A DNA stretch of 64,000 nt from Octopus bimaculoides (lineage: Eukaryota). The DNA is taken from positions 6,046,147-6,110,146 of the forward strand of contig NC_068997.1 in assembly GCF_001194135.2 (NCBI RefSeq), in the 5' to 3' direction. Shown here piece after piece: positions 523 through 22,533 of the stretch. The number at the start of each line of letters is the position of its first letter. Within the stretch, counting starts at the first letter, position 1. The notes beneath the pieces are model-generated. The model searched no databases. It was not told the origin of the DNA and saw nothing but the letters and a program-made list of their open reading frames with translations. Made by a program: the position numbers and the translations under genes.

Positions 523-694
523 AGAAGAGCATGTATCATCATCAGGTTTGCATCCAATCACATTGCAACGGAAAGAGACAGCGGGAGATTTCACGAAACG
601 GAAAGCCCGAATGAGGAGTGAAATTGTCATAGGGATGGCGCCATCTTTCTTTAAGTCACCAGCAATAACGCTGAACGCATTCTTGTTGACACAA
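523..694 (-). CDS. EGF-ZP gene exon: C-terminal part of ZP-C
   Basis: Acceptor tttatttcttcatttcaccaccag and donor TCT|gtaagt; 172 nt, phase 2-0; CVNKNAFSVIAGDLKKDGAIPMTISLLIRAFRFVKSPAVSFRCNVIGCKPDDDTCSS. Confidence 0.93.
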
Positions 695-2580
695 CTGGTG
701 GTGAAATGAAGAAATAAATATGAAAATAAGATGTCGACTACATTATATTGAAACAAATGGAGAATGACATTGTGGTGTTTATAACAATTTATAATTTAGA
801 CACACTGTCTCTCTTTCTACACCAAACAGCATACATCCACATATATATTTGCAGCAGTACTTAACATTGGAAACTGTGTCAGCTCAGTAACACGATGGTC
901 ACGACATATCAGGTGATCTTAGTCTAAGGTTCAGCCAATCACTGGCGCATTTGAGTGGGTGTTAAGAATAATGGAAAATTCCATACAGTTTCGCACCAAA
1001 TCATGATTATAAATTGAGAGAGAGGAGAGCGAGCACTGGCCAAGGACAGCAGATGTTTTCGTGGTCAGCAGACAGTCATTCCAGTTTGACTTCATTTTAA
1101 AAGACCACCTCATCAAGCATGAAGACTTACGTTTTCTCTTCTCACCAAACATACATTCTCACATACTAGTTACTAGCATTCAGCATGATAGCCTTCAGCA
1201 AGTAACCTTTGTAATGTCAATATGAAAATAAATATGGTTCATTAAACTGGATCTTTTAGTTGGCTTTCTGTGCAAAATGGCACGCAACCTGAACAAATAC
1301 TCAACTCTCAGCAAACCAAGCCACACATTTGTTTTATGATTATTTCATCGCTCTTTCAATAGACACGCTGAGGGCTAAAGCTTTGCCAATGAAATAATGA
1401 AAATATCAAAACAGGTCCGGAGTTGTCTCTTCGTATTTGTTAAAATAATTAAAATTAGTTGTTGATAAAAGAAAAAGATAAAATAGTATGGAATTGTTAC
1501 AAACCTGTTCTCGATAAGTTTTATACTGCTATGTCCACCTCCAGCTTCAAAAGCTTCGCAGTCACTTACGTGGAAGTCGTTGAATACTGCACGAAAAAAA
1601 AACAGTATTGTTTTTATAATATAATAATAAAGATACACATAAATAGAAGATATGTGCACACGCGCGCGTGTAATGGTTACTAAATTTTGGCACAAGGCCA
1701 GCAATTTAAGGGAAGTGGGATAATCGATTACATAGATTCCAGAGCTTACTGGTATTTATTTTATCAACCATAAAAGGCAAAGTCAATCTAGGTGGAATTT
1801 GAACGTAAAAATTCGGAAGAAATACTGAGCGCTTTGCTCGACGCTCCATCGATTCTGCAAGCTATCACCCTTATACATATGAGATACGTCTGTAAATATG
1901 ATAAAGATATGGTCATATAATCTAATTATAAATATACGTTTTTATGTCCAAAAACGAGAAGTATACTAAACACGTTTTAATTTAACCGCTCATTCGAAGC
2001 TGAAAGTTCACACATATACGTGTGCGCGCGTACACAAGGGACATACACACATGGGAATGTTATAGACAGTCTGAAACATTAGAGAAAACAATGCAAAAAT
2101 GATGAGACTAATAAAAACGATCGATTTCATTACAGCTAACATTTAATATCCCCTGGTGAGGATCAGATGAAACGATGAAACTGCCAGTTGTAATATAATC
2201 GTCATTTGAATAAAATTTTATGTATGTATGCATGTATGTATGTATGTATGTATGTATGTATGTATGTATATATGGCTCAGTGGTTAGAGCGCCGAGCTTA
2301 CGACCGTGAGGTTGTGAGTTCTAATATCGGACCGGGCTGCGTGTTGTGTTCTAAAGCAAGACACTTTATTTCACGTTGCTCCAGTTCACTCAGCTGTAGA
2401 AATGAGTTGCGACGTCACTGATGCCAAGCTGTATCGGTCTTTGCCTTTCCCTTGGATAACACTGGTGGCGTGGAGAGGGGAGGCTGCTGGTCTTCCATAA
2501 ACAACCTTGCCCGGACTTGTGCCTCGGAGGGTAACTTTCTAGGTGCAATCTCATGGTCATTCGTGACCGAAGGGGGTCTC

Positions 2581-2632
<52 letters not shown>

Positions 2633-4718
2633 TGTACGACATCTTCATCTACCAAATCCACTCACAAGAGTTTCGGTCGCCCCGAAGCTATGGTAGAAGA
2701 TACATGCCCAAAGTGCCATGTAGTGGGACTGAACCCGAAACCATGTGGCTAGGAAGCAAGCTTCTTACCATACAGCCACGTCTGCGGCTATATTATATGA
2801 AAATATGACAGTCTACACCGCGTTTCGGTCTTGGCTGGGCCATGCACAACTGTCGTGACTGGTCTAGCTTGGGATAAAACAAAGAATAGATTGTCATATT
2901 TTCATAATATATGTGTGTATGTATGTATGTATGTATGTATGTATGTATGTATGTACGTGTGTATGTATGTGTGTATGTATGTATAAAGAAACGACGAAAA
3001 TAAAATAAACTGCCGAGATGTCAATAAAATAAACAAATAGATGACTAGCTAAATGAAAGAGAGACGCCATAATTACCTTCATTATCCCACAAAATAAAAG
3101 TCAGTTGAACCTTATCTCCTACAAACACTGCTTTCTTCAGCGGATCACCATTAGTATCCTTAATCTCAAATCCAATTGGATTGTAAATATTCTTGGTATC
3201 AGTTTTGGTCAAATTTGAACTAGAATTAATGGAATGGCAAAATTTTAATTAACGTTTGGACTTAGCAATGGCTGAATATAGTCAAACACACACACACACA
3301 CAAACACTCGTAAATTTACGTGAACTAAAGCAGTTCAATTTTAGTTCAATCAAAGCTACATATATTATCACTGGGAGTACACATGGACGCAACAGCAGTA
3401 CATACATACATACATACATACATACATGTATACACACTCACACACACATATATATATATATGTATATATGTATTTATCTGAATTAACTATTGCTTAACCA
3501 TTGTCTCACTCCGTCTCAGATGAAGGGATATAATAAATATCCTAGAAACAGCTGTAAGACCTTCTCTTTATAAATGTTCTAAAATCTTCACAGCCTTGTT
3601 TTTTTTTTTTTCATTCTGAAAAAAATTCTTATATATATATATATNNNNNNNNNNNNNNNNNNNNNNNNNNNNNNNNNNNNNNNNNNNNNNNNNNNNNNNN
3701 NNNNNNNNNNNNNNNNNNNNNNNNNNNNNNNNNNNNNNNNNNNNNNNNNNNNNNNNNNNNNNNNNNNNNNNNNNNNNNNNNNNNNNNNNNNNNNNNNNNN
3801 NNNNNNNNNNNNNNNNNNNNNNNNNNNNNNNNNNNNNNNNNNNNNNNNNNNNNNNNNNNNNNNNNNNNNNNNNNNNNNNNNNNNNNNNNNNNNNNNNNNN
3901 NNNNNNNNNNNNNNNNNNNNNNNNNNNNNNNNNNNNNNNNNNNNNNNNNNNNNNNNNNNNNNNNNNNNNNNNNNNNNNNNNNNNNNNNNNNNNNNNNNNN
4001 NNNNNNNNNNNNNNNNNNNNNNNNNNNNNNNNNNNNNNNNNNNNNNNNNNNNNNNNNNNNNNNNNNNNNNNNNNNNNNNNNNNNNNNNNNNNNNNNNNNN
4101 NNNNNNNNNNNNNNNNNNNNNNNNNNNNNNNNNNNNNNNNNNNNNNNNNNNNNNNNNNNNNNNNNNNNNNNNNNNNNNNNNNNNNNNNNNNNNNNNNNNN
4201 NNNNNNNNNNNNNNNNCTCTATTACTTTTGTTTATCACTTTTGAAATGCATAGAAATTTTACAGCTTTTCACATATATGACAATGGAGTGCCATCTTTTT
4301 CAATCAAGGTTCCATAGGTGCCAATGTTTCCAAAGCCTCTCGAGACATTTATACGGTTACTGAAAGAACTGCACGGAAATTTGTCCTCGAACGGGGACAA
4401 ATTCGGCCTTATAAGTGAATCGATTTTACGAACTCATCTACGAAGATCCGCACCAGTCTACTTGGGAAATGGACCAGTAGATGGAATGTTTTTTGTTTAA
4501 CAAGAATGTGGAGCTGAAAGCGTGGCTCGATGAATTCTTGTCACGACACGTTAATTTCTTCTGTCAAGACATTGACAAGCAAGTGGGACGTTGGTAAGAA
4601 GTCTTGAACAACAAAGAATATATTATCGACTGAATTGTTAAAATTGTTGACGAAAGATGAGGATTAAAATAAATGAAAAAAAAAAACAATAACAAACAAA
4701 TCTATCTTACAATCCAAT

Positions 4719-4749
<31 letters not shown>

Positions 4750-6424
4750 TGCGCATGTGCGTTTATGTGTGTGTTTAGGCTGCAGGATACTTTTGTTTGG
4801 AAGTCTATTGATTCTGACAATCCACCAATTCCATATCAGTAATAAAGAATATATTTGACCCTACAAGGACAATTACTCTTTTATGTTCAGCTAATGAAAG
4901 TTAAATTCTCAAAGTTAAAAAAAAACAAAAAAAAAACACACTTTTGAGAACTTTGGCACCTCTTAAATCCAACCGACCCATTTATACACAATGAACTTCT
5001 AATATTTCTTTTGATGCCAGAATTGATTTTTTGTTTAAAAACGTCTTTCAATACAGATTGTATATTTGAATAAACTTTGGTTGTCTAAAAGCTTAATCAT
5101 TAGCTTTGTCTAATTATCACATATTTGATATCATTTCATGTCAACTCACTCTTCGACAACATTGGAAGTCATAGACATAGGGTCAATAACCATCTTGAGG
5201 TTATGTTGGCAACTGACTGTGTGCAACTCATCGAAACTGTTCATGATGTCTTGGTTGTACAGCACCACGATTTCCCGCTTAAACGACACATCACCGATCT
5301 GTAAAAGGAATAAAGTGGACGCAAGTTTAAAAATGATATCATTTATATCGGTAAATATTTTTTTTTTATTCAGACATAAAAAGGGCCACACAAGCAGAGG
5401 GAGAAGAAAGAGAATGAGGTTGTGTGATGTTTATGGCCGTTTTTCTGCCTGATGCGTCGCTGTTGCCGCGCGCCCTGCAATGGTCTAATAATGAGAGAGT
5501 AATCCAACGGTGAAATCTGTATGTTAAAAATAGTTGCCAAATCTCTCTCATATCATATCATATCTCATCGTATTAAAAGGGAAGAGCACACTTGATAAAC
5601 TATATTCGAACAAAAATAAATAAATAAATAAATTAATTAATTAATTAAAAAGGAAGAAAACGGCATGGTCACAATTAGAATACTTTTGGTGAAAGATCTG
5701 CCTACCAGGTGTGACCTGGGGCTAAACAACAACAACAACAATAATAACAAAAATAACAAAATGACGAGGACGACGAACGAACCTCTTCATTCGAGTTGCT
5801 AGAAAAAGCAACCAAATTTCTCTCAAAATAAAGCTCACATTAAAAAGGGACGAGGTATTCAATGCCTGAGAGAGAAACGAGATGAATATAGCTGGTAAAC
5901 CTGATTATAGGTGTGCTCAGGAATGGATAACTTTAGCTAGATAATAACAACAGCAACATTCATCTCCGTCAATAGCAAATTAAGAGTTAATTATTAATAT
6001 TTAAATGTAAATGGGTTTATCAATATCGTATCAAAACTATATCACTATTAATAAACTATCAGTATCAATAGCTGATATTATATTGACAACAAGAAGGATG
6101 TGGTTATTTTCTGCAGTACGTTAGTGACCTTACTTACCTTTGGAATATCGCTGAAAACAGTTTGACCTTCAATCCCGGCTCCACATCCAGAAAAGTAATC
6201 CAAATTAAGTTCCCACACGTCTCCCATATTGTTGAAAGAACAGTTCGGATTATCTTCGAAATCTTTCACGAATATTTTCCCGGTGAATTGTCCGAAAGGA
6301 GCGATTTTTATAGACATCTGTGTGCTTTGGCAGTCGACGGCAACTGGGGAAAATAAAACAAAACGACGGCAAATCCTTGAGAAAATCCTATACAATTTTA
6401 TTAGGTGTTCATTTTAGAAACGGG

Positions 6425-6507
<83 letters not shown>

Positions 6508-8635
6508 TAAAAATACATATACTATGAGGAAAAGATAACAGAAATATTTATTGACGTTGAAGAAGCAAGAATTCTATAGAAATGAAGAAGTAAATTTACT
6601 CACCTCGTGAACTTTCGCATCGGTCACCATAAAAACTCGGACTACAATAACAATAAAATGTTTCATTGGCTGTCACACATGTGCCTCCATTTTGACACTT
6701 CAAACCTCCACAGTTGGGACTTGGAGAAATGCTGGCTGTAGCATGAAAAAAATTACAAAAAAAAAAAGAAGAAAATTTAGAATTTAAAAAATAGGATAAA
6801 AGTCGACGTGTCTATTGTAAAGACTCAGGTGTTGCTGGTAATATGGCGGGTAACGGTGGAAATGTATATTTTTGTTATATCGGGTTGTTATATGTTTTGT
6901 TATATAAATACGGTATTTATAGTATTATTTTTCTCTCCCCAAATTTTATGGTCAATGAATACTAATGAAATTAATATAATTTTCAAAATAAAAATTATTT
7001 AAATTAAAATACAATTAAAGCGGAATTTCCTATTTCGTATATTTAAAATAAACATATTTTATTAGTAACTGTGATATTAGTTAGTTATCGATAATTAGCT
7101 ATATGACATCACCCAATATTATCCGCAATGGCAAAAGTATATAAACCTGAACATTGTCATACGTGAGTAACACTAGTTTAGGATAACTTAACCAAGGGAG
7201 ATAAATACGATAATATCAGAATTATCTTCTTTTGTGGGACGTATAAACAAAAAGAGAGGAGAGACAAACTGCCAATGATTATAATATATTACTGGAAGGG
7301 GTGGGGGTGCAAAGAAATAGGAAGATGAAAGGTCATGCATTTGTTTTAGTTGTTCCACCATCATCATTATCAAAACCCATGAAAAACAACGGCAACGAAA
7401 AACAACAATGACAACACAAAGACACAGTAGCAGTCAAAGAAAGAAAAAGACAAACCACACACATGCTGGTTATAATGAAGAAAGAGAAGGAGGAGAAGGA
7501 GGAGGAGGGAGAGGAGGAGAAAGAGGAGGAGAAAGAGGAGGAGAAAGAGGAGAAAAAATGAAGTAGAAAGGGCAAAAGAAAGAGGAGGAGTAGGAGGACA
7601 ATGGTGGTGACGATAATGATGATGATGATGAAAAGAAGAAGAAGAAGAAGAAGAAGAAGAAGAAGAAGAAGAAGAAGAAGAAGGAGAAGAAGAAGAAGAA
7701 GAAGAAGGAGAAGAAGAAGAAGAAGAAGAAGAAGAAGAAGAAGAAGAGCAACAATAATAATAACAATAACAGAGTGAAGAAACATTGAGAATTGAGTCGA
7801 AGAGGGTGAACTTTAAAGAAGTGTCAGCGTGTTGATATTACTAGACGTAGCGTTGCGCATGTGTATGTGTGTATGTGAATCTGTGTATGTGTATAACTGT
7901 GTCTGTGTGTGTGCTATTGTATGTATGCGACTCTCTCTCTCCCCTGTCTCTCTTCTCCCCTCACTCCCTCTCTCTTCCCCCCTCTCTCTCTCTCTATATA
8001 TATATGACACACCACACCACACCATCACTCCACACCACACCATCACTCCACAACACAACACACAACACACCTCACTACACCACCACACTACATCGCACCA
8101 CCCTGCACACACTAGCATTGACCACTTCCCAGCANNNNNNNNNNNNNNNNNNNNNNNNNNNNNNNNNNNNNNNNNNNNNNNNNNNNNNNNNNNNNNNNNN
8201 NNNNNNNNNNNNNNNNNNNNNNNNNNNNNNNNNNNNNNNNNNNNNNNNNNNNNNNNNNNNNNNNNNNNNNNNNNNNNNNNNNNNNNNNNNNNNNNNNNNN
8301 NNNNNNNNNNNNNNNNNNNNNNNNNNNNNNNNNNNNNNNNNNNNNNNNNNNNNNNNNNNNNNNNNNNNNNNNNNNNNNNNNNNNNNNNNNNNNNNNNNNN
8401 NNNNNNNNNNNNNNNNNNNNNNNNNNNNNNNNNNNNNNNNNNNNNNNNNNNNNNNNNNNNNNNNNNNNNNNNNNNNNNNNNNNNNNNNNNNNNNNNNNNN
8501 NNNNNNNNNNNNNNNNNNNNNNNNNNNNNNNNNNNNNNNNNNNNNNNNNNNNNNNNNNNNNNNNNNNNNNNNNNNNNNNNNNNNNNNNNNNNNNNNNNNN
8601 NNNNNNNNNNNNNNNNNNNNNNNNNNNNNNNNNNN

Positions 8636-8666
<31 letters not shown>

Positions 8667-9029
8667 CGGGTTTGCTACCGTTACAGAGAGAGGTGTCGTA
8701 AGCATCCTGACAGTGGATAGATGGTCTCTCTGCACCGTTGCATGCATTACTTGGCTGGTAGAAAGGCAGATAAACACAGGTTAGCTGAATTAATATATTT
8801 ACATGGAATACAATACGCAGACTACGAAATAAAGAATACAAAATAAACAGAAGGAGTTATGTAATAGTCTTATCGTGACGGCTGTTTCGGTAAACCATTA
8901 CTTAAATCGTAACCATGTTCATTAGCGACCATAATATCGTAGGTGTACGGAATAACACGAGTTCTTTTAGATTCATCAGGCAAGGTCATCCTCATCGGAA
9001 GAATATCGCCACATACATACATACATACA

Positions 9030-9063
<34 letters not shown>

Positions 9064-9795
9064 CATACACACACATACATACATACGTGTGTGTGTTTGT
9101 GTATATGTGTTTGCTTGTGTGTGTGTATATATGTGTATATATGTGTTTGTGTGTGCGTGTGTATGTATACATATCAGGTTACTCTTAGTGATATTGGTAA
9201 CATGTGACCTAGTACAACGTATCGCAACTAAATACTACCAAGCCTGCTTGGTATGTTAGGGTGATTTTCGCCGGTCACTCTACGAGAGGAAAATCAAAAT
9301 CTTCAGCAGGCAGATGAACTCAGTCGAGTCAACGTCCATCTAACAGCTGGGTGTGAGAGAGATCCCTCGGTCTTCGTTTAGACATTCCTTTAAGAGAAGT
9401 AAAACTCTGATGTAAGACCTTCGACTTCGTTTGCATCTAGTGATGTAGACTAGTTCTTCATTTTGGTTAAATTCATACGTTGTTCAGAGAGGGGAAATAG
9501 CCCAGCGCTAAGCATTTCGTCACTTCAAGAAGCTTCAGGCGCAGGTATTGTTTAGTTTTTAACATCTCTATTGGCATCTCTATTATGTATTGCATAATAC
9601 GGCGTGCTGTATTGAGAAAGACAAAATACTCAATGAAAAATTCCATAATGGAATGACGTCATGCATCAGCGTTGGTGGTAACCCTTTGAACACCTATTGC
9701 TAGTTATTAGAATATATGTCCCTAAGACTAAAAAACCTGCTCATACTTAAAAGAACAATCAAACGATGGCATTATGCAAAATCGAGTCGCAGCCA

Positions 9796-9830
<35 letters not shown>

Positions 9831-10000
9831 CGCGTGTGTGTAGTCAAGGCCGAGAGTTCGCAAGCGGTAAGAATAAAACAAGAGTCATGTTTCTAAAGTT
9901 ATTTTTAAGTTTCTAACTTCCCTTAGATCAAACTTAAAACTGTAATAATCGCGTATGTGTTAGCATGTGTGTGTGTGTGTGTGTTGACATGTGTGTGTGT

Positions 10001-10032
<32 letters not shown>

Positions 10033-10781
10033 ATTTATGTGAGTGTGTATACACACACTTATGAGGGTGAGTAATTAATTATTCGCAATGCATTAATTTG
10101 GACAACTAATGATTTATCGTCGTATATGTATACCTCTGTGTTTGTGTGTGTTTGTGTTTGCGCTTACAAGGATCCGCCAGTCATATATTTAGATTCCTTG
10201 AAGCATTTTTATTCAGAATTAATCTTGTCGATCATAAAATAATGAGAAACTATATACTCCTGTGAGTTGGCTATTTGCAGCGAGCTGCCAGACTCATTGG
10301 AACACGAGACAAAATGTCTCGCACTATGTGTTCTGGCTCTTTACATCTCACGTCAAAATCGTAGTTGATAAAATAGTGTACCGGTCAGGTACTGGTATTG
10401 TTGGGATTGACAAACCTTCATCCTCAAATTTGCTGGCATTGTACCTATGTCATAAATCATCAAAGGCGGCTAGCTGGCAAATTCGTTATCGTTCTGGACA
10501 AAATGCTTAGTTCTGAGTTCAAATTCCACCGAAGTCGACTTTGCCTTTCATCCTTTCGGGGTCGAAGAAATAAGGACCTGTTGAACACTGGGTTTGATGT
10601 AATCAACTAGCCCCCCCCCCGCCCCCAGCAACATTCCAGGTCTTATGTCTATAGTAGAAAGGATTATTATCATTATTATTTCTTAGCAATATTTTTACGT
10701 TCTGAGCACAAACCCCGCGGAGGTCAACTTTGTCTTTCAGTAAGTTACTAAAATTGGTGGCATTGGGCCAAAATTTGAAAC

Positions 10782-10815
<34 letters not shown>

Positions 10816-11192: not shown

Positions 11193-11253
<61 letters not shown>

Positions 11254-11863: not shown

Positions 11864-11949
<86 letters not shown>

Positions 11950-12175: not shown

Positions 12176-12212
<37 letters not shown>

Positions 12213-13443: not shown

Positions 13444-13492
<49 letters not shown>

Positions 13493-13643
13493 GCCTGTTT
13501 ATAGATAGTTATATATGTGTGTATGTGTGCGTGTGTGCGTATATNNNNNNNNNNNNNNNNNNNNNNNNNNNNNNNNNNNNNNNNNNNNNNNNNNNNNNNN
13601 NNNNNNNNNNNNNNNNNNNNNNATATATACATGTGTGTGCGTG

Positions 13644-13696
<53 letters not shown>

Positions 13697-15455
13697 TCAC
13701 ACACGTGCAGATGTGTGTGCGTGCGGACACACACACAACACACACACAGACACATACACACACGGAGAGAAAGTTGGGTGAAGATCGGAAAGTGAAATAT
13801 TGAATGGTGACTCGCAAAAACAACCTTCAAAAAAATCTATTTCATTCTACTAAAAAAGTATCGAGTAGTCTTTCTGTAATAATTACATTGATACAAAGTG
13901 ATAACACGCACACACACACACACACGTACATACGCACATACAATTGTAATCGACCGTGGAGAAGTGAAGTCAAACTCGATTCTAGCGGAGTTTGAAAGCA
14001 TAAACTTGAGACACAGCAATTAATTGTCCTTATTTCTTCATGCTTTCTATTTCCTTCACAGAAAATCAAAAAAGTTATGTGTAAAACGAAACATTAGAAG
14101 CAAAAATAAATAAATAAATATATAAATAAAGCTAAAAAACTTTATATCGTTGAAGGCAGATTAGAGTGTGGACTGGGGTGATAGGGTTCCAATAAGTGAG
14201 CAAATAAATGGGTAGGTGAATGAATGAGTCAGTGAGTGAGTGAACAAGTGGGAAAGTGAGCTCGTGAGCGAATGAAAGAATGACTAGGTGAGTGAATGAA
14301 AACAAAACGAAAAAGACAGGAAGAAAGAGGTAAAAAAGAGAGAGAAAGACAAATAAAGACAGAGAAGGAATCGGGTCAAAATGAACGAAAGCTAAAGCCA
14401 AGGAAGAGAGTTTAGCGTTTCATTGAAGTCAACCCTGAGTGGAGTGTGTGTAAGCAATACTCACAAGACCAAGATTTCTCACTCATCAACATATGCGGTT
14501 CATGGGCTGAAACTGAGAAGATACGTATTTAAAGTAGATGACCACTGATATACTTGTAGTCCGGTAGAGGGCAAACATTATCAGAGGCATGGGCTGGTTT
14601 GTGACAGTCAAGTTTCGGTCAAATACTGTTGGCAAAGAAAAAAATCCTAACATGGGCTATAACAAGTAACCTTAGATGCTAAGAACCTTCCTAAGTCTCC
14701 TAGCAGTCCCTAATCACTGTTTTCTGGAACTGAATTAAACAAGGTATTTTTAAAACCTACTTCCTCTATCCATCTGTTCGAATCTTTAAGGATTGTTCCT
14801 ATTGTACCTATAACTAAAGGGATACATTTTACCCACACTTTCCATAGCCTCTGTAACTCAATGGCAGAATCGTTAGCACGCCGGATGAATTACCGCCGAG
14901 TTCGACATCACCTTTCATTCTTTCGTGGTCGATAACATAAGTACCAGTTGCGCACTGGGGTCGAAGTAATCGACTTACCTAAAATTTGAAATTATTATTA
15001 TTTGCGCACTGCAGCCTATGTTATAGATCAATGCTATAAGCTAGAGCATCGTTCTGAGGTTCAATAAAATAAGTTACATTCTCGTGTTGATTTAATTGGC
15101 TATGCATCGATGCTACACTTCACATTGTGTTGCAGAATACTGGATATTCTGTCAAATTTCCGGTAATAACATCAGTTATCCTCTCTATATGCTTTCACTC
15201 TGTGCCAATAGTTAGAGACTGAGGATGTTAATAACATCCGTTAATTCCCTCTATATGCCTTACTCTATCAAAAGTTACAGATACCTGGGTTAAAAGAAGG
15301 ATGTATTTTTACCTTAATCTGAATATGGGGATATTGCAATGGGGGATGTGTTAACGGTCCAAATTCCTTTAAGACAAACTCTTCCTTTGTTTTTTTTTTG
15401 CCCCTTATCATCTTTCTTTTGTCCTTGTGTTCTCTGTATTTCTCTCTCTCTCTCA

Positions 15456-15499
<44 letters not shown>

Positions 15500-16272
15500 A
15501 AGTGAACTGGTTGTGAGCAACCGGAGTGGCAGTGACTTTAGTGAGTGTGATTCATTAAATGGAGACTAAAGTGGTACGGTGTTAGTGAAGGTGAGTTTCT
15601 AAGTTCTAATTTCAACAACATTTCTAGTATTTCAGTGTTGCTATCACAAAGGAACAATAAAATAAATGATACCAGTCATATGCTGCAGATGGATCAATCA
15701 ATTATAAAGGTTTTGTTTTGGCCTAAACCATTACTCCTTAGACTATGTGTGTTATTGCACGTGCGCATGCGCGTGTGCATGTATATATGTATATATCAAT
15801 GTATACATATATGTATGTATGTGTATATATGTGTGTGTGTATGTATGTATGTATATGTGTATGTACACACACACACACACACATACACACACACACATAC
15901 ACACACACACACGCTTTATATGCAACTGCTTGTAACCAACAGCTATTTATAGTTAGGCCTCATGGGAACTCGTCTCTTTTTACACCAGCTGATGAATCAA
16001 ATGATGAAGCATCTAGGTGTACTGGAAGATTACTACAAGGTAAATATATGCGTAATTTCTTTATATTGGAGATTAATTTCTTTCGTTTACTTATTTCACG
16101 TAGACCTAATTGGTAATCAGTTGTCGAACACACCCAGTGAACAGATTAGGCCAAGATGTGTTCCAAGAGGTTCACGATAGGCCATTCATCATACATGTAT
16201 GAATGTATGTTTATATATATACATCGTATATGTACATATAGATGTTTATGTATGTATGTATGTATGTATGTA

Positions 16273-16304
<32 letters not shown>

Positions 16305-19300
16305 TGTAATTCCAATAAAAAACTGAATATATTAGGAAAAAGGTTTTATACTGTGATTGATGTCGAAGATGAAAAATCCAGGAATGTATTCCAGAATGAA
16401 AGAAGTAAATAACTCGAGGACTATTTACAAAGGGATAAATATCAGTACGATAGTGATCATGAAGGTGGCAAACTGGCCGAAACGTTCGCCCGTCGGTCGA
16501 AATGCTTAATGAAATTTCGTCCCTTTTTACGTTCTGAGTTCAAATGCCGCCGTAGTAGACTTTGACTTTCATTCTTTCGGGGTCGATAAAATAAGTACCA
16601 GTTGAACATTGGAGTCGATGTAATCGACTTACTCCTTCCCCCAAAACTGTTGGCCTCGTGCCAAAATTTGGAAGAGATAGGTGGCGAACTGGCAGAATCG
16701 GTAGCACGCCGGGCAAAATACTTAGCGGCATTTCGTCCGTCTTTACGTTCAGAGTTCAAATTCCGTTGAGGTCGGCTTTGACTTTTATCCTTTCGGGGTC
16801 GATAAAATAAGTACCAGTGAAACACTGGGTTCAATGTAATCGACTTACCCTTTCAATTGCTGGCTTTGTGCCAAAATTTGAAACGAATATTATATCGATC
16901 ACAACTTGGTATAACACACCTCTTACTCCAAATACATCAGCGATGTGGTTAGGTATGCTAAAGACCAAATTTTTATAGCAATCTCGAATTATCTCTTGTG
17001 TCTCAACCGGTAATTTTCTTCTCATTATAATCTGTGAATTTTCTCATGATGTTTTTCAGAAATGTCGAAATTATGAAATAATATTTTATCATTCATGTAT
17101 ATTAATGTGTAATATCAATTAATTAACTCAGGTTCTGGAATATAAATTTTGAAGGCTATTCAGAAAAATATTAAGATAGGCAGACAGATGGACAGAGGCA
17201 CACAGAGAATGAGAGAGAAACAATACAAAAGAAGAGTTTATATCTTTGATAAGGTAGAACTACTAACGACACCCTTAAAATATTTCAATATTTCGTTTGT
17301 ATTCTTAACTTGTTAACTAGAATTGGTCCTTGATAATGTTTGTGGCATCCCTCTAGCAGACTGCAAAATGTTTTGTTCAAGAAGGATTTTACAAGAATTG
17401 CTTTATTTGATGGAAAAAGAAAATGCTCTAATGTGGTGATAAGCAACTGAGATAAAGCCATAAGCTAATACATAATATAGACGTTAAGTTTTGGCATCCA
17501 AAGACACGTGATAATGCATTTGCAAAGTAAGCGTGGAAACACTTGATGAGTTGACAAACAAAACTAGATGCAATCAAGACTCGAAATGAACTGAGGAGAG
17601 GAAAACATTGAATTAATGTTTAAATTTGTCCAAGACGACTAAGGGTGAAAACTCCTGGGCTCAAATAATTGAAATTAGAGTTAACTCTATTGAAATCTCA
17701 GTTCAGCAACAATGGAAATAGTCATGCATCAAGGGGAAGCGGGAAAGATTAAACTAGTCTTTTTTAGGATACAGGGACAACTGTGGACATGTTTCGATGT
17801 TATTAACCCTCCTCAGCAAAGCATATTGTTATATTAAATTGATGTTAAGTTCTGACGCTTAAAAGCCATTTGATAGTATATTAGCAAATAAAAACTGGAG
17901 TTCGAGGGAATTTATGGTGGTATGTTTTGGTTAAATAAGGTCCAATGAAGTTAGTAAATATGTATGTCTGTATTTTCTGGGGAGATGAGGATTCGGATAT
18001 TTTATGATTGACGTTTCGTCGAAGAATCATTAGATTTATGTTAACCGTCGACACCTAAATTAAAATAGATGATACGAAATGTTCATCGTTAGAACAATGC
18101 TGATAATATCGTCGTCATCATCATCATCATCGTTGTTATCGTCGTCGTCATCATCATCATCACCATTTAACGTCCATATGCCATGCTCGCATGGAGTGGA
18201 CGGTTCAACAGAATCCAAGTAGCCTGAGGGCTGTGTTGTTCTCAAATGCCTGCTTTGGTAGGGTTTTTACGACTGGATGTCTTTCCTAATGCCAACCCAT
18301 TTACAGAGTATACTGTGCGATTTTTTCTTGTGACTGACCACAAGTGAGGTCACCAAATAATTTGCAAGACAGAGAAAAGAATCTCGACTGAGTGGAGTCG
18401 TAGTGGAAAGGGAGGTGGCTTTATGACGGGTACTGAGTGGCTAAAGTATGATGCACGCAGCGCGCGCGGACACACACACACACACACACTCGCACTCGCG
18501 TCCCCCACCACTACGTATTTGTTATTCTTATCAAGTGGGTTTTGAGCAGCTGTTACCTAAAGAAACTCGAAGTTTGAAGGACATGGTTAGGTGAAATTAA
18601 AATGAAAGCGCAAATTTAGTGCAAACAAGCTCTGACGTCAAAACGATTAATAGTAATATTAATAAAACTCATTACAGAACGCAGTGCATTATGGTTAGGC
18701 AATATAATTAATTGGTTTGTTTTCATATTTGTTTTCACAATGTTTGTTAAATGTAGCCATTATGACATTTACAATTGAAATTATTGACTTTATAAAGGTA
18801 ATATTATTTTCTTATCTTTATGTCTTCCGTGCTTCATTATGCAGTTATTGGTAGTTTGTTATTTGTTGTTTTTGTGTGTTACTCTTAAGATTTTTTTTTT
18901 ATTTATGTGTGTGTTTGTGTCTTTTTTTTTTTGTTTTTCAAATAAAAATCAATTTGGTATTTAGTTTTACTTGATGCGACCACACTTCATTTTGTCTTCT
19001 GTCAATGAGTCAAACAGCTTCTCAATGCTTCTTTCCCCTTTGTTACTTTGTTGTCAAGAAATTTATTTATAATTTTTTTTTTTTTTTTAATCACTCGGAG
19101 AACGCACGAGTAGCAAAAACTCACCATCTGAAAAGATAACCACAACAATTTTTCTTTTTTTTTTTTTGCAGGTAAACAACATGAACAACAACAACAACAA
19201 CAATGATAGGCATCAACATCAATAGCGTCATTTTACTCCTCCTCCTCCTCCTCCTCCTCATCATCATCATTAACAACAACAGCAACAACAACAGCAACAG

Positions 19301-21361
19301 CAGCAGCGACAACAACGACAAAAACGACAGACAACAATGGCGACAGCATCAATATCATCATCATCATCACCATCCTCTTCATTATCCTTATCATCATCAT
19401 CACCATCATCACCATCCTCTTCATCATCATCATCATCATCACCGTCATCAATATCATCATCAACAACAATTATAACCATAAATAGTAATGACATCTGTAT
19501 TATCGTCACAAAAATGACGTGTGGGGGGGAAACTAGGAGGGGGTAATTTAAAAAGGGTGCAACGAAAGAGGATCACAGTAGCATCGAAGAACAGTAATAA
19601 GAAAAAGAGCATCATCACCATCATCATCACCATCATCATCACCATCATCATCATCGTCGTCGACGTCACCGTCATCGTCATCGTCATAGTCATCATGATC
19701 GTTGTCGTCGTTGTCGTCACCATCATCATCATCATCATATATATGATATATAGAGAGGTAGGTAGGTAATAAGGTAGGTAGGTAGGTAGGTAGGTAGGTA
19801 GTTNNNNNNNNNNNNNNNNNNNNNNNNNNNNNNNNNNNNNNNNNNNNNNNNNNNNNNNNNNNNNNNNNNNNNNNNNNNNNNNNNNNNNNNNNNNNNNNNN
19901 NNNNNNNNNNNNNNNNNNNNNNNNNNNNNNNNNNNNNNNNNNNNNNNNNNNNNNNNNNNNNNNNNNNNNNNNNNNNNNNNNNNNNNNNNNNNNNNNNNNN
20001 NNNNNNNNNNNNNNNNNNNNNNNNNNNNNNNNNNNNNNNNNNNNNNNNNNNNNNNNNNNNNNNNNNNNNNNNNNNNNNNNNNNNNNNNNNNNNNNNNNNN
20101 NNNNNNNNNNNNNNNNNNNNNNNNNNNNNNNNNNNNNNNNNNNNNNNNNNNNNNNNNNNNNNNNNNNNNNNNNNNNNNNNNNNNNNNNNNNNNNNNNNNN
20201 NNNNNNNNNNNNNNNNNNGTAGACAACCACCACATATATGTCGTATGTATGTCAATATGCATGTATATATGTGTCTATGTATGTGTGTATGTATGTATGT
20301 ATGTATGTATGTATGTGTACGAACGTGTGTACATATATATGTTTGCATGGATGTATGTAACTTTGTATGTACGTACATATAAATATGCGCGTATGAATGT
20401 CCGAATGTATGAATGCGTGTGTTTGTGCGTGCGTAAATATGTATGTATGTAACATGTAATCCATTACAACCCATTGAATGGTTAGGCTGTAGGCTGTTAA
20501 ATCGACAACTCTACCAAGCCTTGGGAGGGAGGTTTTCGCTTGCCACGCTGCATGATGAAAAACAAAACTTATCTAAGGGTGGATGAACTCAGTCGAGTCC
20601 ATATCATCTAACAGCTGGGTGTGAGAGAGACCCCCTCCTAGTCTTTGTTTAGATAGAAGTAATCTCACCTTCGACTTCGTTTGCATCCAGTGATGTAGAC
20701 TGGTTCTTGATTTTGGTCAAATGAATATGTTGTTCAGAAAGTGTGATTAGCCCAGTGCAAGACATTTAATCACTTTCAAAAGCTTCGGGCACATGTGCTG
20801 TTTGATTTTTAACATTTCTAGTAACATCTCTACCACGTGTTGCTTAATATTGCTGTGTCGAGAAAGGCAAAACATCCAATGAAAAAATCCATGATGGAAT
20901 GACGGTGTGCGCCAGTGTGGGTGGTAACTCTTTGAACTCGTATTGCAGGAGGCACTCATTGTTGCCATATTTGTGCAACAGAGTGTAGGTCCTTAGCAGG
21001 ACTGAAAATTCCTATCCGTACTGCTTATGTTTAAGACAAAAATCAAACAATGTTATTGTTCGAAATCGAGTTGTAGCCATCATTTACCTACCTGCCTGCC
21101 TTCCTGCCTGTTAGTCTGTTTGTCGGTCTGTCTGTTTGTCTGTCTGTCTGTGCAACCATTAATCCGGGCACCTTTTTTCTCCCCGTTTTTTCCCCCTCTC
21201 TCTCTATCTGTTTTCTCTCCTCATTCCTTTCCTTAGAAGAGCGTAGTCTCAAAACGTCAAAGACTTCTTCCATTTTCCCTTAGTACCAAAGTAATATACC
21301 TTGTTTGTTGTTCTCTCACCCGTCTCTCTCTTTTGATTTTTGTCTTTTGTATAGTTTTGCA

Positions 21362-21423
<62 letters not shown>

Positions 21424-22345
21424 GTCTGTCTGTCTGTCTGTCTTTTTCTCCTCTCTTAAATGCATATATGTATGTGTGTGCGCGTGCGTGCAAGTGTGTA
21501 TGTGTGTGTATACACACCATACACATATACATATATATCACACATTCTTATAAAAGCAACTGTGGCGTTTAGTAACAGAATGTCGTAAGCACCATCCTGG
21601 CCATTTTCGAAGTTAGTGTATCGTTTTCTTTGTCTCGACGTCGAGAAACCGAAAAATTTGGGAGGAAGAACCGGTGAGGCTTGCAATAAGGTCGAAAATC
21701 CGGCTGAAAAAATTGTACCTTGACGCTGTTGACACGACGCTCGCTCACCCAAACTCGGACCAGAGAGTTTAGTAGCACATCATCGTAAGCACACTCACAC
21801 ACAATCAGTAACTTTGGTGTGGTCCCTGTATCATTTTTCGAGTGTTATGGCTCATTTTCTAATATTCTTCGTTACCATCGTAACGATAATGGGCTATTAC
21901 CTTACTATCTTGTCTTACTTACCTCTTAAATATACTTACCTTGGTATATTAAAACAGAAACAATACCTTGGGTGAGGGTCTCTGTATGCTTTTTGCTAGG
22001 TATTATAGCTAAAATATGCAATGCGATACACCGTTTCATTGTACCCATTTATTCTACAAAATGAGAAAGACGCAGTCATTGTTTAATCTTTCAGATGCAA
22101 ACATAAATATATAATTTTACATCGGTGAAATGGTTAGAGGAGGTCTTCACGGTCATTTTAAGACCAAAACTAGCTTCCTAACTACATTCCTTGTCGATAT
22201 ATCGTATTCTGAATGTCGCGAAACTTTGTCATTTTCTCGGTTTTTAAGTTGTGGCACTTACGCGGTCTGTTACTAAACGTTTCAATTGAAAGAAAAGAAA
22301 TTACAAGGATAGAACTATAAAGACAACACCACCACCACCACCACC

Positions 22346-22376
<31 letters not shown>

Positions 22377-22533
22377 TCAACAACACCGACTAGATCATAT
22401 TTACATGTTAGAAGTCCACAGTCATGTCCAGTATAATTGTTGGAACATTCGCAGTAATTTGAAGTTGTTAAACACCTTCCATTCTTGGCACACGATACTC
22501 CCCAACGTCTACAATCAAAGTCGACTTTCTGAG
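523..22533 (-). CDS. Spliced gene for a secreted/membrane protein with two EGF-like domains and a ZP domain (EGF-ZP / ELDP-like). Seven exons in the window, 3'-partial, 5' exon(s) uncertain
   Basis: Exons join in frame (1013 nt = 2 + 337 codons): AQKVDFDCRRWGVSCAKNGRCLTTSNYCECSNNYTGHDCGLLTSSISPSPNCGGLKCQNGGTCVTANETFYCYCSPSFYGDRCESSRVAVDCQSTQMSIKIAPFGQFTGKIFVKDFEDNPNCSFNNMGDVWELNLDYFSGCGAGIEGQTVFSDIPKIGDVSFKREIVVLYNQDIMNSFDELHTVSCQHNLKMVIDPMSMTSNVVEDSNLTKTDTKNIYNPIGFEIKDTNGDPLKKAVFVGDKVQLTFILWDNEVFNDFHVSDCEAFEAGGGHSSIKLIENSCVNKNAFSVIAGDLKKDGAIPMTISLLIRAFRFVKSPAVSFRCNVIGCKPDDDTCSS. It has two 6-Cys EGF repeats, four ZP-N cysteines and ZP-C motifs (V-x-VGD-x-V-x-L, F-x-V-x-x-C-x-A, AFRF...V-x-F-x-C-x-V-x-x-C). 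Confidence 0.9.
1505..1586 (-). CDS. EGF-ZP gene exon: ZP-C
   Basis: Acceptor tttttttttcgtgcag and donor AACAG|gtttgt; 82 nt, phase 1-2; FNDFHVSDCEAFEAGGGHSSIKLIEN. Confidence 0.9.
1681..1870 (-). mobile_element. SINE family A, diverged
   Basis: Reverse-strand match to family A. Confidence 0.7.
2272..2580 (+). mobile_element. tRNA-derived SINE family B with a CORE-like central domain. Related copies at ~11510-11760(+), 39557-39800(+), 53110-53300(-), 58590-58870(-)
   Basis: A-box tggctcagtggttaga, B-box-like gttctaatatc, then gcaagacactttatttcacgttgctccagttcactcagctg. Confidence 0.8.
3077..3219 (-). CDS. EGF-ZP gene exon: start of ZP-C
   Basis: Acceptor ccattaattctag and donor GAAG|gtaatt; 143 nt, phase 2-1; SNLTKTDTKNIYNPIGFEIKDTNGDPLKKAVFVGDKVQLTFILWDNE. 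Not in the ORF track. Confidence 0.92.
3513..3560 (+). ncRNA. Degenerate minimal hammerhead-like motif
   Basis: gucu CAGAUGA a gggaua-uaauaaa-uauccu a GAAA cagcug UA agac. Stems I, II and III are recognisable; the core has a U4->A change. Confidence 0.4.
4330..4717 (+). mobile_element. mariner transposase 3' remnant
   Basis: 4505-4633 translates NVELKAWLDEFLSRHVNFFCQDIDKQVGRW*EVLNNKEYIID*, the mariner C-terminal motif with a stop. Confidence 0.7.
5150..5298 (-). CDS. EGF-ZP gene exon: end of ZP-N and linker
   Basis: Acceptor ctttattccttttacag and donor GA|gtgagt; 149 nt, phase 0-2; IGDVSFKREIVVLYNQDIMNSFDELHTVSCQHNLKMVIDPMSMTSNVVE. Confidence 0.92.
6138..6343 (-). CDS. EGF-ZP gene exon: start of ZP-N
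   Basis: Acceptor tttgttttattttccccag and donor AAG|gtaagt; 206 nt, phase 1-0; AVDCQSTQMSIKIAPFGQFTGKIFVKDFEDNPNCSFNNMGDVWELNLDYFSGCGAGIEGQTVFSDIPK. Confidence 0.93.
6604..6735 (-). CDS. EGF-ZP gene exon: EGF-like domain 2
   Basis: Acceptor tttttttcatgctacag and donor CGAG|gtgagt; 132 nt, phase 1-1; SISPSPNCGGLKCQNGGTCVTANETFYCYCSPSFYGDRCESSR. Confidence 0.93.
7430..7790. repeat. Compound (GAG)n/(GAT)n/(GAA)n/(AAT)n microsatellite, representative of dozens of simple repeats in the window
   Basis: Direct observation. Similar blocks at 19180-19800, 30395-30510, 38700-38830, 43470-43550, 44155-44400 and 45845-45920, plus many (CA)n/(TACA)n/(TA)n/(ATCT)n tracts. Confidence 0.97.
9313..9797 (-). 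mobile_element. Degenerate I-group LINE fragment (RT C-terminus to RNase H start), copy 1
   Basis: Colinear, diverged match to 20581-21081. Confidence 0.5.
10462..10667 (+). mobile_element. SINE family A (tRNA-like head, central gtcgactttgcctttcatcctttcggggtcga domain)
   Basis: Matches many other copies in the window. Confidence 0.85.
10816..11160 (+). mobile_element. 3' end of a Tx1/L1-type LINE
   Basis: VEREVLSSKFVER*ANAGRMASVKGPILSVHL*, then a T-rich UTR, AATAAAAGAATAAA and a (TTA)n tail. Confidence 0.5.
12030..12180 (-). mobile_element. Decayed C2H2 zinc-finger tail of an RTE-type LINE ORF2
   Basis: FEYSVCQKVCKFNGGLKRHFKIH: a single finger lacking its first Cys, with no splice context. 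Confidence 0.45.
12458..12665 (-). mobile_element. SINE family A
   Basis: Reverse-strand match to family A. Confidence 0.85.
14861..14995 (+). mobile_element. SINE family A, internally deleted
   Basis: Family A head and core. Confidence 0.75.
16462..16890 (+). mobile_element. Two tandem SINE family A copies
   Basis: Head-to-tail copies starting at 16462 and 16680. Confidence 0.88.
17781..17821 (-). ncRNA. Minimal type I hammerhead-ribozyme-like motif with intact core
   Basis: Minus strand: cuuug CUGAGGA ggguuaauaacauc GAAA caug UC cacag. Stem I has 4/5 pairs, G10.1-C11.1 is present, stem III is the palindrome ACAUGU, and the cleavage triplet is GUC. Confidence 0.55.
20581..21081 (-). mobile_element. 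Degenerate I-group LINE fragment, copy 2
   Basis: Matches 9313-9797. Broken translation has TGAHRHS (cf. TGAFRTS) and VYITGCK (cf. RNase H YTDGSK). Confidence 0.5.
21566..22279. mobile_element. Non-autonomous TIR element (MITE-like, ~714 bp)
   Basis: Termini cgtttagtaacagaatgtcgtaagcacca / revcomp cgtttagtaacagaccgcgtaagtgcca; no TSD recognised. Confidence 0.55.
22405..22533 (-). CDS. EGF-ZP gene exon: EGF-like domain 1
   Basis: Acceptor ctttctcttgtccttcttcttttgcag and donor ACAT|gtaaat; 129 nt, phase 1-1; QKVDFDCRRWGVSCAKNGRCLTTSNYCECSNNYTGHDCGLLT. Confidence 0.88.

What the first reader, a model, noticed from the sequence alone, without database searches (positions are those of the whole stretch)
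523..22533. EGF-EGF-ZP gene with shell-matrix-protein architecture in an apparently shell-less cephalopod genome
Seen in sequence: seven phase-compatible exons encode two EGF repeats followed by a complete ZP-N and most of ZP-C. Three of these exons do not appear in the ORF track. Established: EGF+ZP proteins (Lottia EGF-like domain-containing proteins, bivalve EGF-like/EGFZP) are molluscan shell-matrix components, and ZP modules polymerise into extracellular matrices. Inference: if this is Octopus, an intact copy suggests a retained non-biomineral role, for example in stylet, skin or sucker cuticle, egg envelope or beak matrix.
Basis: partly seen in the sequence, partly recalled or inferred. 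Interest (0 to 1): 0.7.

Follow-up and report, generated by a model that had tools for sequence, protein, structure and literature searches.

The report
Octopus EGF-EGF-ZP gene, already annotated

Summary
Seven minus-strand exons between 22533 and 523 have GT-AG borders and compatible phases. They encode two EGF domains, a complete ZP-N and all of ZP-C except its last cysteine.

All five N runs lie in introns. The spliced peptide is collinear and gapless against the Argonauta hians orthologue and cuttlefish transcripts, so no coding exon is hidden in a gap.

- the first coding exon (start codon and signal peptide) at 40818-40767;
- a conserved 48-nt alternative cassette exon at 14512-14465;
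- two final exons 2.9 and 5.0 kb left of the window, carrying the last Cys, an RKRR furin site, the hydrophobic patch, the transmembrane helix and the tail.

The window is 100% identical to O. bimaculoides CM046617.1. The 355-aa model is identical to RefSeq XP_014769935.1/XP_014769934.1.

PF00100 does not hit. VERL_C and CUT_N do, as do solved ZPD and uromodulin sequences (E 1e-24), and the predicted fold matches ZP modules.

The closest non-cephalopod relatives are Haliotis and Lottia ELDP2. Purifying selection is strong (pN 0.036 against pS 0.67 versus Argonauta).

Setiamarga et al. (bioRxiv 2021) and Shimizu et al. (2022) already report this gene in octopuses. Its role in octopus remains untested.

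The parts
40767..40818 (-). Coding exon 1: ATG plus signal peptide MYLLEYIQPLLMMTLIY(S), 52 nt, ends in phase 1. It lies outside the finder's range.
   Evidence: tblastn match of 17/17 residues to A. hians P0001. Donor is ACT|GTAAGT. Identical to P0152 residues 1-17. The same N-terminus is encoded in the Sepia transcripts upstream of the called Met.
40819..40907 (-). At least 89 nt of 5' UTR contiguous with exon 1, conserved with the cuttlefish 5' UTR and the A. hians upstream sequence.
   Evidence: blastn: window 40777-40907 matches L002 350-480 (75%), and window 40760-41059 matches L001 10059-9765 (72%). A sensitive blastn re-run gave window 40777-40907 = L002 340-470.
22405..22533 (-). Coding exon 2: EGF-like domain 1 (6 Cys), 129 nt, phase 1 to 1.
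   Evidence: Splice sites. Pfam EGF_Teneurin and EGF_2 hits. 86.5% nucleotide identity to the A. hians exon.
14465..14512 (-). Alternative cassette exon, 48 nt, phase 1 to 1. It encodes FSAHEPHMLMSEKSWS and inserts a disordered 16-aa linker between EGF1 and EGF2. Present in the 490-aa isoform, skipped in the 474-aa isoform.
   Evidence: Sequence and cag|TT...T|gtgagt borders. Present in P0152 (O. bimaculoides X1), O. sinensis X1/X2 and Sepia P0163. The exon and flanking intron are 84.5% identical to A. hians intron DNA. AF2 pLDDT is below 50 over residues 67-78.
6604..6735 (-). Coding exon 3: EGF-like domain 2 (6 Cys), 132 nt, phase 1 to 1.
   Evidence: Pfam PF00008 EGF at 25.7 bits (cut-off 21.5) and EGF_2 at 25.1 bits.
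6138..6343 (-). Coding exon 4: first part of ZP-N, with Cys 1-3 of the ZP module. 206 nt, phase 1 to 0.
   Evidence: The CUT_N (ZP-N type) hit starts here.
5150..5298 (-). Coding exon 5: end of ZP-N (Cys 4) and start of the interdomain linker. 149 nt, phase 0 to 2.
   Evidence: CUT_N covers residues 106-204 of the 355-aa model.
3077..3219 (-). Coding exon 6: interdomain linker and first strands of ZP-C. 143 nt, phase 2 to 1.
   Evidence: VERL_C (ZP-C type) covers residues 181-350 of the model.
1505..1586 (-). Coding exon 7: ZP-C, including Cys 5 (VSDCEAF). 82 nt, phase 1 to 2.
523..694 (-). Coding exon 8: ZP-C with four more Cys (NSC, FRC, GC, DTC). 172 nt, phase 2 to 0. This is the last exon inside the window. 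The last ZP-C Cys, RKRR, the hydrophobic patch, the transmembrane helix and the tail are in two exons at window -2895..-3047 and -5025..-5231 (CM046617.1, about 6043251-6043099 and 6041121-6040915).
   Evidence: Locus L008.

Best explanation
[quoted passage not shown] This is the cephalopod member of the molluscan EGFZP family.

**The product.** It is a type-I membrane precursor laid out as follows: signal peptide, EGF1, an optional 16-aa linker from a conserved cassette exon, EGF2, ZP-N, linker, ZP-C (10 Cys in the ZP module), an RKRR furin-type site, an external hydrophobic strand, a transmembrane helix, and a short tail with an invariant C-terminal motif.

**Most likely mechanism (inferred by analogy with uromodulin and ZPD).** The precursor travels to the apical surface of an epithelium. 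Cleavage at RKRR releases the blocking hydrophobic strand. The ectodomain then either polymerises through its ZP module into an apical extracellular-matrix filament or binds other matrix proteins.

**Shown here:** gene structure, identity, intactness, domain folds, strong purifying selection, and transcription in cuttlefish larvae.

**Inferred:** cleavage, polymerisation, and the tissue where it acts.

In a shell-less octopus the role is probably a non-mineral apical matrix, or the shell-sac/stylet matrix. It is not a decaying relic.
For: **Gene model.** Eight in-window constitutive exons with GT-AG borders, in frame. The model is 355/355 identical to P0152/P0158, that is XP_014769934.1/XP_014769935.1. 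The window is 100% identical to CM046617.1.

**Domains.**
- Pfam gives EGF, EGF_2, CUT_N and VERL_C.
- A family profile hits solved ZPD ('uromodulin', 28yj) at E 1.1e-24 and human uromodulin at about 1e-14, over EGF2 plus the ZP module.
- The AF2 model has mean pLDDT 79.8. It places a beta-strand at 402-413, after the RKRR site, and a transmembrane helix at 433-467.
- The top Foldseek hits are ZPD, endoglin, uromodulin, betaglycan and ZP2 ZP modules.

**Family.** 538 hits at E<=1e-3 among 1.84 billion representatives. The best non-cephalopod hits are Haliotis ELDP2 (5e-66) and Lottia ELDP2 B3A0S3 (3e-47). The 12 EGF Cys, most ZP Cys and the R..R cleavage site are invariant or nearly invariant across 42 family members.

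**Constraint.**
- pN 0.036 against pS 0.67 versus A. hians.
- pN 0.10 against pS 0.82 versus Sepia.
- ZP-N is 95% identical between octopus and cuttlefish.

**Synteny and expression.**
- FBPase is the tail-to-tail neighbour in both Octopus and Argonauta.
- Full-length transcripts of both splice forms occur in 90 and 15 blocks of the Logan collection (one block per run for the six places shown). The six runs shown include ones that papers list as Sepia esculenta whole larvae.

**Literature.**
- EGFZP is conserved in cephalopods including O. bimaculoides and O. vulgaris. The family has an RRRR/RKRR site between ZP and the transmembrane helix, and the ZP domain pulls down eight shell-matrix proteins (PMC9290575).
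- The Nautilus shell proteome contains the orthologue (PMC8700984).
Against: - PF00100 itself gives no hit, and CUT_N is 0.3 bits under its cut-off.
- There are no octopus tissue-expression or protein data. I found none in the literature.
- No full-length transcript contigs for the Octopus proteins are in the collection.
- Some ZP modules, such as endoglin and betaglycan, do not polymerise. Shimizu et al. think most EGFZP stays at the cell surface.
- The invariant cytoplasmic tail (GIVDFKIPRVTN) suggests that the membrane-bound form also matters.
- The Foldseek TM-scores for the whole chain are low (about 0.2) because domain orientations differ.
Confidence: 0.9

Rival explanations
1. The protein acts mainly as a membrane-tethered cell-surface protein, either an adhesion or co-receptor molecule or an anchor for matrix proteins. 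This would resemble endoglin, betaglycan or some Drosophila apical ZP proteins, rather than a shed, filament-forming matrix subunit.
For: - The transmembrane helix and cytoplasmic tail are conserved. The last 12 residues are identical in Octopus, Argonauta and Sepia.
- Endoglin and betaglycan ZP modules are among the top fold matches.
- Shimizu et al. state that most EGFZP probably remains at the cell surface, and that its ZP domain binds other matrix proteins (PMC9290575).
Against: - An RKRR site followed by a hydrophobic beta-strand is invariant across the family. That is the hallmark of polymerising ZP precursors.
- The best sequence matches among solved structures are the filament formers ZPD and uromodulin.
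- Lottia and Nautilus orthologues are found occluded in shell, so they are released from the cell (PMC9290575, PMC8700984).
Confidence: 0.3
2. The gene is retained for the vestigial shell. It would be expressed in the embryonic shell field and shell sac and contribute to the stylets, so its role is still 'shell' matrix rather than a new one.
For: - The family is expressed in mantle epithelium in bivalves and limpets and occurs in Nautilus and Lottia shells (PMC9290575, PMC8700984).
- The cuttlefish orthologue is transcribed in larvae, which are building a cuttlebone.
- From general knowledge: octopods keep a shell sac.
Against: - EGF-ZP was reported absent from the Spirula shell and argonaut eggcase proteomes (bioRxiv 10.1101/2021.07.10.451900).
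- Conservation at 83-95% across coleoids with very different shell remnants is higher than usual for shell-matrix proteins.
- Whole-larva RNA-seq says nothing about tissue.
Confidence: 0.25
3. It is an egg-envelope or gamete-recognition ZP protein, functionally like abalone VERL/VEZP.
For: The best Pfam ZP-C match is VERL_C, and the best solved relative is the egg-coat protein ZPD.
Against: - Gamete-recognition ZP proteins typically evolve fast. This one has pN 0.036 at saturated pS.
- It is transcribed in larvae.
- Shimizu et al. place VEZP in a separate ZP clade from EGFZP.
Confidence: 0.05
4. It is a decaying relic or an assembly artefact: a pseudogene, or exons joined wrongly across the assembly gaps.
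For: Nine N runs lie within the gene span, and the original 449-aa gene model (A0A0L8HS11) had a different, probably wrong, N-terminus.
Against: - All splice sites are canonical and the frame is open.
- The model is gapless and collinear with A. hians genomic DNA and Sepia transcripts.
- The protein is strongly constrained, and the alternative exon is conserved.
Confidence: 0.01

Closest known systems
[quoted passage not shown]
   Same: It is the same gene. The window DNA is 100% identical to CM046617.1, and the spliced model is 355/355 identical.
   Different: Nothing differs. The window lacks only the last two coding exons. The older 449-aa UniProt model has a different N-terminus without a signal peptide or EGF1.
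[quoted passage not shown] 2022, PMC9290575)
   Same: - The layout is the same: signal peptide, 2 EGF, ZP, furin site, transmembrane helix.
- The Cys framework is conserved.
- It is the third-ranked representative cluster in an exhaustive HMM scan, at E 2.8e-47.
   Different: - Only about 28% identity.
- The Lottia and Nautilus proteins are proven shell-occluded proteins. The octopus protein has no mineral shell to enter.
- One-to-one orthology against paralogues is unresolved in my tree.
- The coleoid proteins are far more conserved among themselves (83-95%).
Vertebrate uromodulin and ZPD (PDB 4wrn, 6tqk, 6zs5, 28yj)
   Same: - An EGF domain directly precedes a 10-Cys ZP module.
- A consensus cleavage site is followed by an external hydrophobic strand and then a membrane anchor.
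- Profile E-values are 1e-24 and 1e-14, and these are the top Foldseek hits.
   Different: - About 12-19% identity.
- Uromodulin is GPI-anchored, is cleaved by hepsin and has extra domains (EGF I-III, D8C).
- The octopus protein has a transmembrane helix, a cytoplasmic tail and a furin-type RKRR site.
- Polymerisation is not shown for any EGFZP.
Abalone VERL/VEZP egg-envelope ZP proteins (Pfam PF25272 VERL_C)
   Same: The ZP-C region scores above the VERL_C gathering cut-off (31 bits against 27.2).
   Different: - VERL/VEZP proteins lack the tandem EGF pair.
- They form a separate clade in Shimizu et al.
- They evolve rapidly, whereas this protein is strongly constrained.

Membership tests
Molluscan EGFZP (ELDP1/2, LUSP-17) | N-terminal signal peptide | tested here: met
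   Exon 1 encodes MYLLEYIQPLLMMTLIYS, which forms a hydrophobic helix at residues 3-15 in the AF2 model. It is 17/17 identical in Argonauta despite saturated synonymous sites, and it is also encoded in Sepia. No dedicated signal-peptide predictor was available.
Molluscan EGFZP (ELDP1/2, LUSP-17) | Two tandem EGF-like domains, 6 Cys each | tested here: met
   Pfam EGF and EGF_2 are above cut-off for EGF2. EGF_Teneurin scores 23.8 bits (cut-off 24.3) for EGF1. All 12 Cys are invariant or nearly invariant in 42 family members.
Molluscan EGFZP (ELDP1/2, LUSP-17) | One ZP module (ZP-N plus ZP-C) after the EGF pair | tested here: met
   VERL_C scores 31 bits (cut-off 27.2) and CUT_N 26.7 bits (cut-off 27). 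The profile hits solved ZPD/uromodulin at E 1e-24. The top Foldseek hits are ZP modules with probability 1.00.
   No PF00100 hit at E<=1 for the window model, for P0001 or for P0002. In this Pfam copy the ZP-N and ZP-C halves are matched by the separate models CUT_N and VERL_C instead.
Molluscan EGFZP (ELDP1/2, LUSP-17) | Furin-type site (RRRR/RKRR) between ZP and a C-terminal transmembrane helix | tested here: met
   In the full-length protein from the same locus (off-window exons, L008), RKRR is at 383-386 and the transmembrane segment at about 439-460. R383 is nearly invariant and R386 invariant in the family.
Molluscan EGFZP (ELDP1/2, LUSP-17) | Groups with named EGFZP proteins rather than another ZP clade | tested here: inconclusive
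   The family-level result is clear. The nearest representatives are Haliotis, Lottia and Patella ELDP2, and nearly all full-length hits are molluscan ELDP1/2. A BLOSUM62 NJ tree puts the coleoid clade next to the Haliotis/Lottia/Patella ELDP2 group. However, the bootstrap for any particular sister is 20% or less. Shimizu et al. 2022 place the O. bimaculoides and O. vulgaris proteins in the EGFZP clade.
Shell-matrix protein (functional class) | Protein recovered from a biomineral matrix | not testable with these tools
   Proteomics are needed. The literature reports it in Lottia and Nautilus shells, but not in argonaut eggcase or Spirula shell.
Polymerising ZP-module precursors (uromodulin/ZP type) | 10-Cys ZP module, cleavage site, external hydrophobic patch, membrane anchor | tested here: met
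   There are 4 Cys in ZP-N and 6 in ZP-C. RKRR is followed by a beta-strand at 402-413 (block pLDDT about 85), then a transmembrane helix.
Polymerising ZP-module precursors (uromodulin/ZP type) | Actual cleavage and filament formation | not testable with these tools
   This requires protein biochemistry and EM.

The most novel reading that the evidence does not exclude
In coleoid cephalopods the ancestral shell-associated EGFZP protein may have taken on an essential, shell-independent apical-matrix role, for example in sucker or skin cuticle, the gut or radular lining, or a statocyst matrix.

Three observations would fit this:
- its unusually high conservation (ZP-N is 95% identical between octopus and cuttlefish);
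- its invariant cytoplasmic tail;
- a 16-aa cassette exon between the EGF domains whose alternative use has been kept since the split of the octopus and cuttlefish lineages.
Probability: 0.3. Interest if true: 0.45.

Novelty: already known. Interest (0 to 1): 0.2.

Why it matters
The gene marks what happens to the conserved conchiferan shell toolkit when the shell is lost. Here one toolkit member stays intact and tightly constrained in octopods, which points to a function beyond mineral deposition.

That conclusion is already in the literature at the level of 'the gene is present'.
- an exact exon map on the assembly and a clean bill for the gaps;
- a measure of constraint;
- the conserved alternative exon;
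- structural support for a uromodulin-like precursor.

The open question is where and how the protein acts in an octopus. That question is directly testable.

Tried and rejected
- I used P0001/P0002 and later P0152 instead.
- **First AlphaFold run.** With a two-sequence alignment it was useless (pLDDT 33.9). The 42-sequence run worked.
- **Word-indexed search.** The homologue search with the 42-sequence profile returned only six proteins. It did, however, deliver the O. bimaculoides entry.
- **Was the window Argonauta?** I considered this because of the 95.5% protein identity. It is rejected, because only exons align to the A. hians locus, at 80-88% nucleotide identity. One search then settled the identity as O. 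bimaculoides.
- **Was P0002 another octopod?** I first assumed so. Papers that list its SRA runs show it is Sepia esculenta.
- **NJ bootstrap.** It could not resolve which gastropod EGFZP is sister to the coleoid clade.
- **Literature searches.** Searches for octopus tissue expression of this gene, and for EGFZP in stylet, cuttlebone or gladius, found nothing beyond the three papers cited.
- **Apparent conserved block.** The block at 46602-46856 against A. hians sits in low-complexity microsatellite-like sequence, so I did not pursue it.
- **RNA genes.** Rfam and tRNA scans of the window were empty.
- **491-aa isoform.** I could not derive the 'YV' junction of XP_014769933.1 from the window sequence and left it.

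Full report
**1. What is in the sequence**

The window is AT-rich (38% G+C), full of microsatellites, and holds 18 N runs. It looks like a eukaryotic short-read scaffold.

Stop-to-stop reading frames on the minus strand showed Cys-rich EGF-like and ZP-like peptides where the finder said they were. A draft concatenation of these found two close relatives:
- P0002, a product of RNA-seq assemblies.

I ran tblastn of these proteins against the window and then inspected the junctions by hand. This gave eight constitutive coding exons in the window. All have GT donors, and exons 2-8 have AG acceptors. All are phase-compatible.

| Exon | Coordinates (minus strand) |
|---|---|
| e1 | 40818-40767 |
| e2 | 22533-22405 |
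| e3 | 6735-6604 |
| e4 | 6343-6138 |
| e5 | 5298-5150 |
| e6 | 3219-3077 |
| e7 | 1586-1505 |
| e8 | 694-523 |

The finder's seven exons are e2 to e8, and its end coordinates are exact. It missed e1, which carries the ATG and the signal peptide 18 kb further upstream.

**2. The gaps**

The five N runs flagged by the scan program all fall in introns.
- One lies between e5 and e6.
- Four lie in the long interval between e2 and e3.
- Four more lie between e1 and e2.

The 355-aa spliced product aligns end to end, without any gap, to the A. hians protein (339/355 identical). It aligns likewise to the cuttlefish product over its 342 aligned residues, 305 of them identical. The exons also occur in the same order and orientation in the independently assembled A. 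hians locus L001. So no coding exon is hidden in a gap, and the reading frame is continuous across all of them.

**3. Which organism and which gene**

Only exons align to the A. hians locus, at 80-88% nucleotide identity. The introns do not align and are about twice as long. The window is therefore not Argonauta.

[quoted passage not shown] Its locus L008 (GCA_001194135.2, CM046617.1) is 100% identical to the window in every block between N runs. The window corresponds to CM046617.1:6046147-6110146.

Apart from the alternative exon described below, my model is 355/355 identical to the RefSeq protein. The same cluster holds XP_014769935.1 (474 aa), several O. sinensis isoforms and an O. vulgaris protein.

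The two remaining coding exons lie 2.9 and 5.0 kb beyond window position 1. They encode the last ZP-C cysteine, GRKRR, a conserved hydrophobic stretch, a transmembrane helix and the tail. A fructose-1,6-bisphosphatase gene lies tail-to-tail downstream in both Octopus and Argonauta, which supports orthology.

**4.

A block of about 150 nt in the e2/e3 intron is 84.5% identical to the syntenic A. hians intron. It contains a 48-nt, phase 1-1 cassette exon at 14512-14465, with borders cag|TT...T|gtgagt. The exon encodes FSAHEPHMLMSEKSWS.

That peptide is present in the 490-aa O. bimaculoides isoform, in O. sinensis X1/X2, and as FSAQQPHMLMSESSWS in the 476-aa variant of P0002. The structure model predicts it to be a disordered linker between the two EGF domains.

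**5. Domain identity**

Pfam gives EGF and EGF_2 for the EGF pair. It gives CUT_N (a ZP-N model; 26.7 bits against a cut-off of 27) and VERL_C (a ZP-C model; 31 bits against 27.2). It gives no PF00100 hit.
- A profile of 42 family members matches the solved ZPD egg-coat subunit (28yj, E 1.1e-24) and human uromodulin (about 1e-14), across EGF2, ZP-N and ZP-C.
- AlphaFold2 with that alignment gives mean pLDDT 79.8.
- Foldseek's best PDB matches are ZPD, endoglin, uromodulin, betaglycan and ZP2 ZP modules.
- The ZP module has 4 + 6 cysteines. RKRR sits 9 residues after the last one.
- A confident beta-strand at 402-413 follows the cleavage site, where polymerising ZP precursors carry their external hydrophobic patch. 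A transmembrane helix follows that.

**6. Family**

An exhaustive HMM scan of 1.84 billion representative proteins found 538 hits at E<=1e-3. The best outside cephalopods are Haliotis rufescens ELDP2 (5e-66) and Lottia gigantea ELDP2, B3A0S3, which is the shell-matrix protein itself (2.8e-47). Patella, Pomacea, Aplysia, Mercenaria, Pinctada and chiton proteins follow.

A BLOSUM62 NJ tree puts the coleoid clade next to the Haliotis/Lottia/Patella ELDP2 group. With bootstrap, only the coleoid clade is supported (100/100). Its sister is unresolved.

Shimizu et al. 2022 (PMC9290575) place the O. bimaculoides and O. vulgaris proteins in the EGFZP clade with gastropods and a scaphopod. Family membership is therefore firm. 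One-to-one orthology to ELDP2 is not shown here.

**7. Constraint and expression**

| Comparison | pN | pS |
|---|---|---|
| Octopus vs A. hians | 0.036 | 0.67 |
| Octopus vs P0002 | 0.10 | 0.82 |

- ZP-N is 95% identical between octopus and P0002.
- The signal peptide is 17/17 identical to Argonauta although nearly all of its synonymous sites differ.

P0002 comes from Sepia esculenta. Three of its six listed SRA runs appear in papers on whole S. esculenta larvae. The Sepia transcripts encode the same N-terminus upstream of the Met that the gene caller chose.

The protein and its alternative exon are thus conserved across the octopus and cuttlefish lineages. It is transcribed in cuttlefish larvae. 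I found no octopus expression data.

**8. How it probably works**

By analogy with uromodulin and ZPD, the likely sequence of events is:
1. The precursor reaches the apical membrane.
2. A furin-type protease cuts at RKRR.
3. The hydrophobic strand leaves.
4. The ZP module polymerises, or binds other matrix proteins.

Shimizu et al. showed binding of the Pinctada ZP domain to eight shell-matrix proteins.

Shown here are the gene, its integrity, the folds, the motifs and the selective constraint. Inferred are cleavage, polymerisation and the tissue of action.

The main rival is a membrane-tethered role, which the invariant tail favours. A role in the shell sac or stylets cannot be separated from a new non-shell role with these data. 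An egg-coat role is unlikely given the slow evolution and the larval transcripts. A pseudogene or an assembly artefact is excluded.

**9. Novelty**

The gene is annotated in RefSeq. Setiamarga et al. [quoted passage not shown] They discuss its non-use in the eggcase. The Nautilus shell proteome paper lists the O. bimaculoides protein as the best hit of a Nautilus shell protein (PMC8700984).

The finding is a correct reading of a known gene, and the idea it raises is already published.

**10. Verdict**

The finding is real, accurately delimited (though incomplete at both ends) and correctly interpreted. It is already known, so interest is low.

Noticed in passing
window 14300-14700 (minus strand), core 14465-14512: A cassette exon with conserved flanking intron sequence, 84.5% identical to the Argonauta intron. 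It inserts 16 disordered residues between EGF1 and EGF2. Both splice forms are found in Octopus and in the cuttlefish Sepia esculenta.
   Followed up: yes
window 33016-34096 (-) and 34256-34795 (+), inside intron 1: Transposable-element remnants. Two adjacent ORFs in different frames match RVT_1 reverse transcriptase (E 8e-17 and 1e-7). Next to them, an ORF matches the Mos1/mariner transposase HTH_48 domain (E 1e-16).
   Followed up: partly
window 28721-29197 (+), 54923-55303 (-) and 54899-55462: A dispersed repeat with a related ORF (…NHNMVEAITTHNKNEYWWNVPVKTSIKCKHNRPDIMIWDRE…) occurs twice in the window, about 84% identical at the DNA level. It has no Pfam match and is probably part of a retroelement.
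   Followed up: partly
window about 19090-19212 (-): The older O. bimaculoides gene model (UniProt A0A0L8HS11, 449 aa) starts with MLFTCKKKKRKIVVVIFSD, which is encoded here inside the e2/e3 intron. It lacks the signal peptide and EGF1. It is probably a mis-predicted first exon.
   Followed up: partly
L008 58619-66050 and L001 32640-40866 (off-window, downstream of the gene): A fructose-1,6-bisphosphatase gene lies tail-to-tail with the EGFZP gene in both Octopus bimaculoides and Argonauta hians, so the microsynteny is conserved.
   Followed up: no
C-terminus of the full-length protein (off-window exon, L008 55844-56050): The last 12 residues, GIVDFKIPRVTN, are identical in Octopus, Argonauta and Sepia, although the rest of the tail varies. 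This is an unexplained conserved cytoplasmic motif.
   Followed up: no
whole window: Coding sequence is very sparse: about 1.1 kb of CDS in more than 40 kb. There are abundant (TG/CA)n, (TATG)n-type and poly-codon microsatellites. Several N runs are flanked by such repeats, which probably caused the assembly breaks.
   Followed up: no
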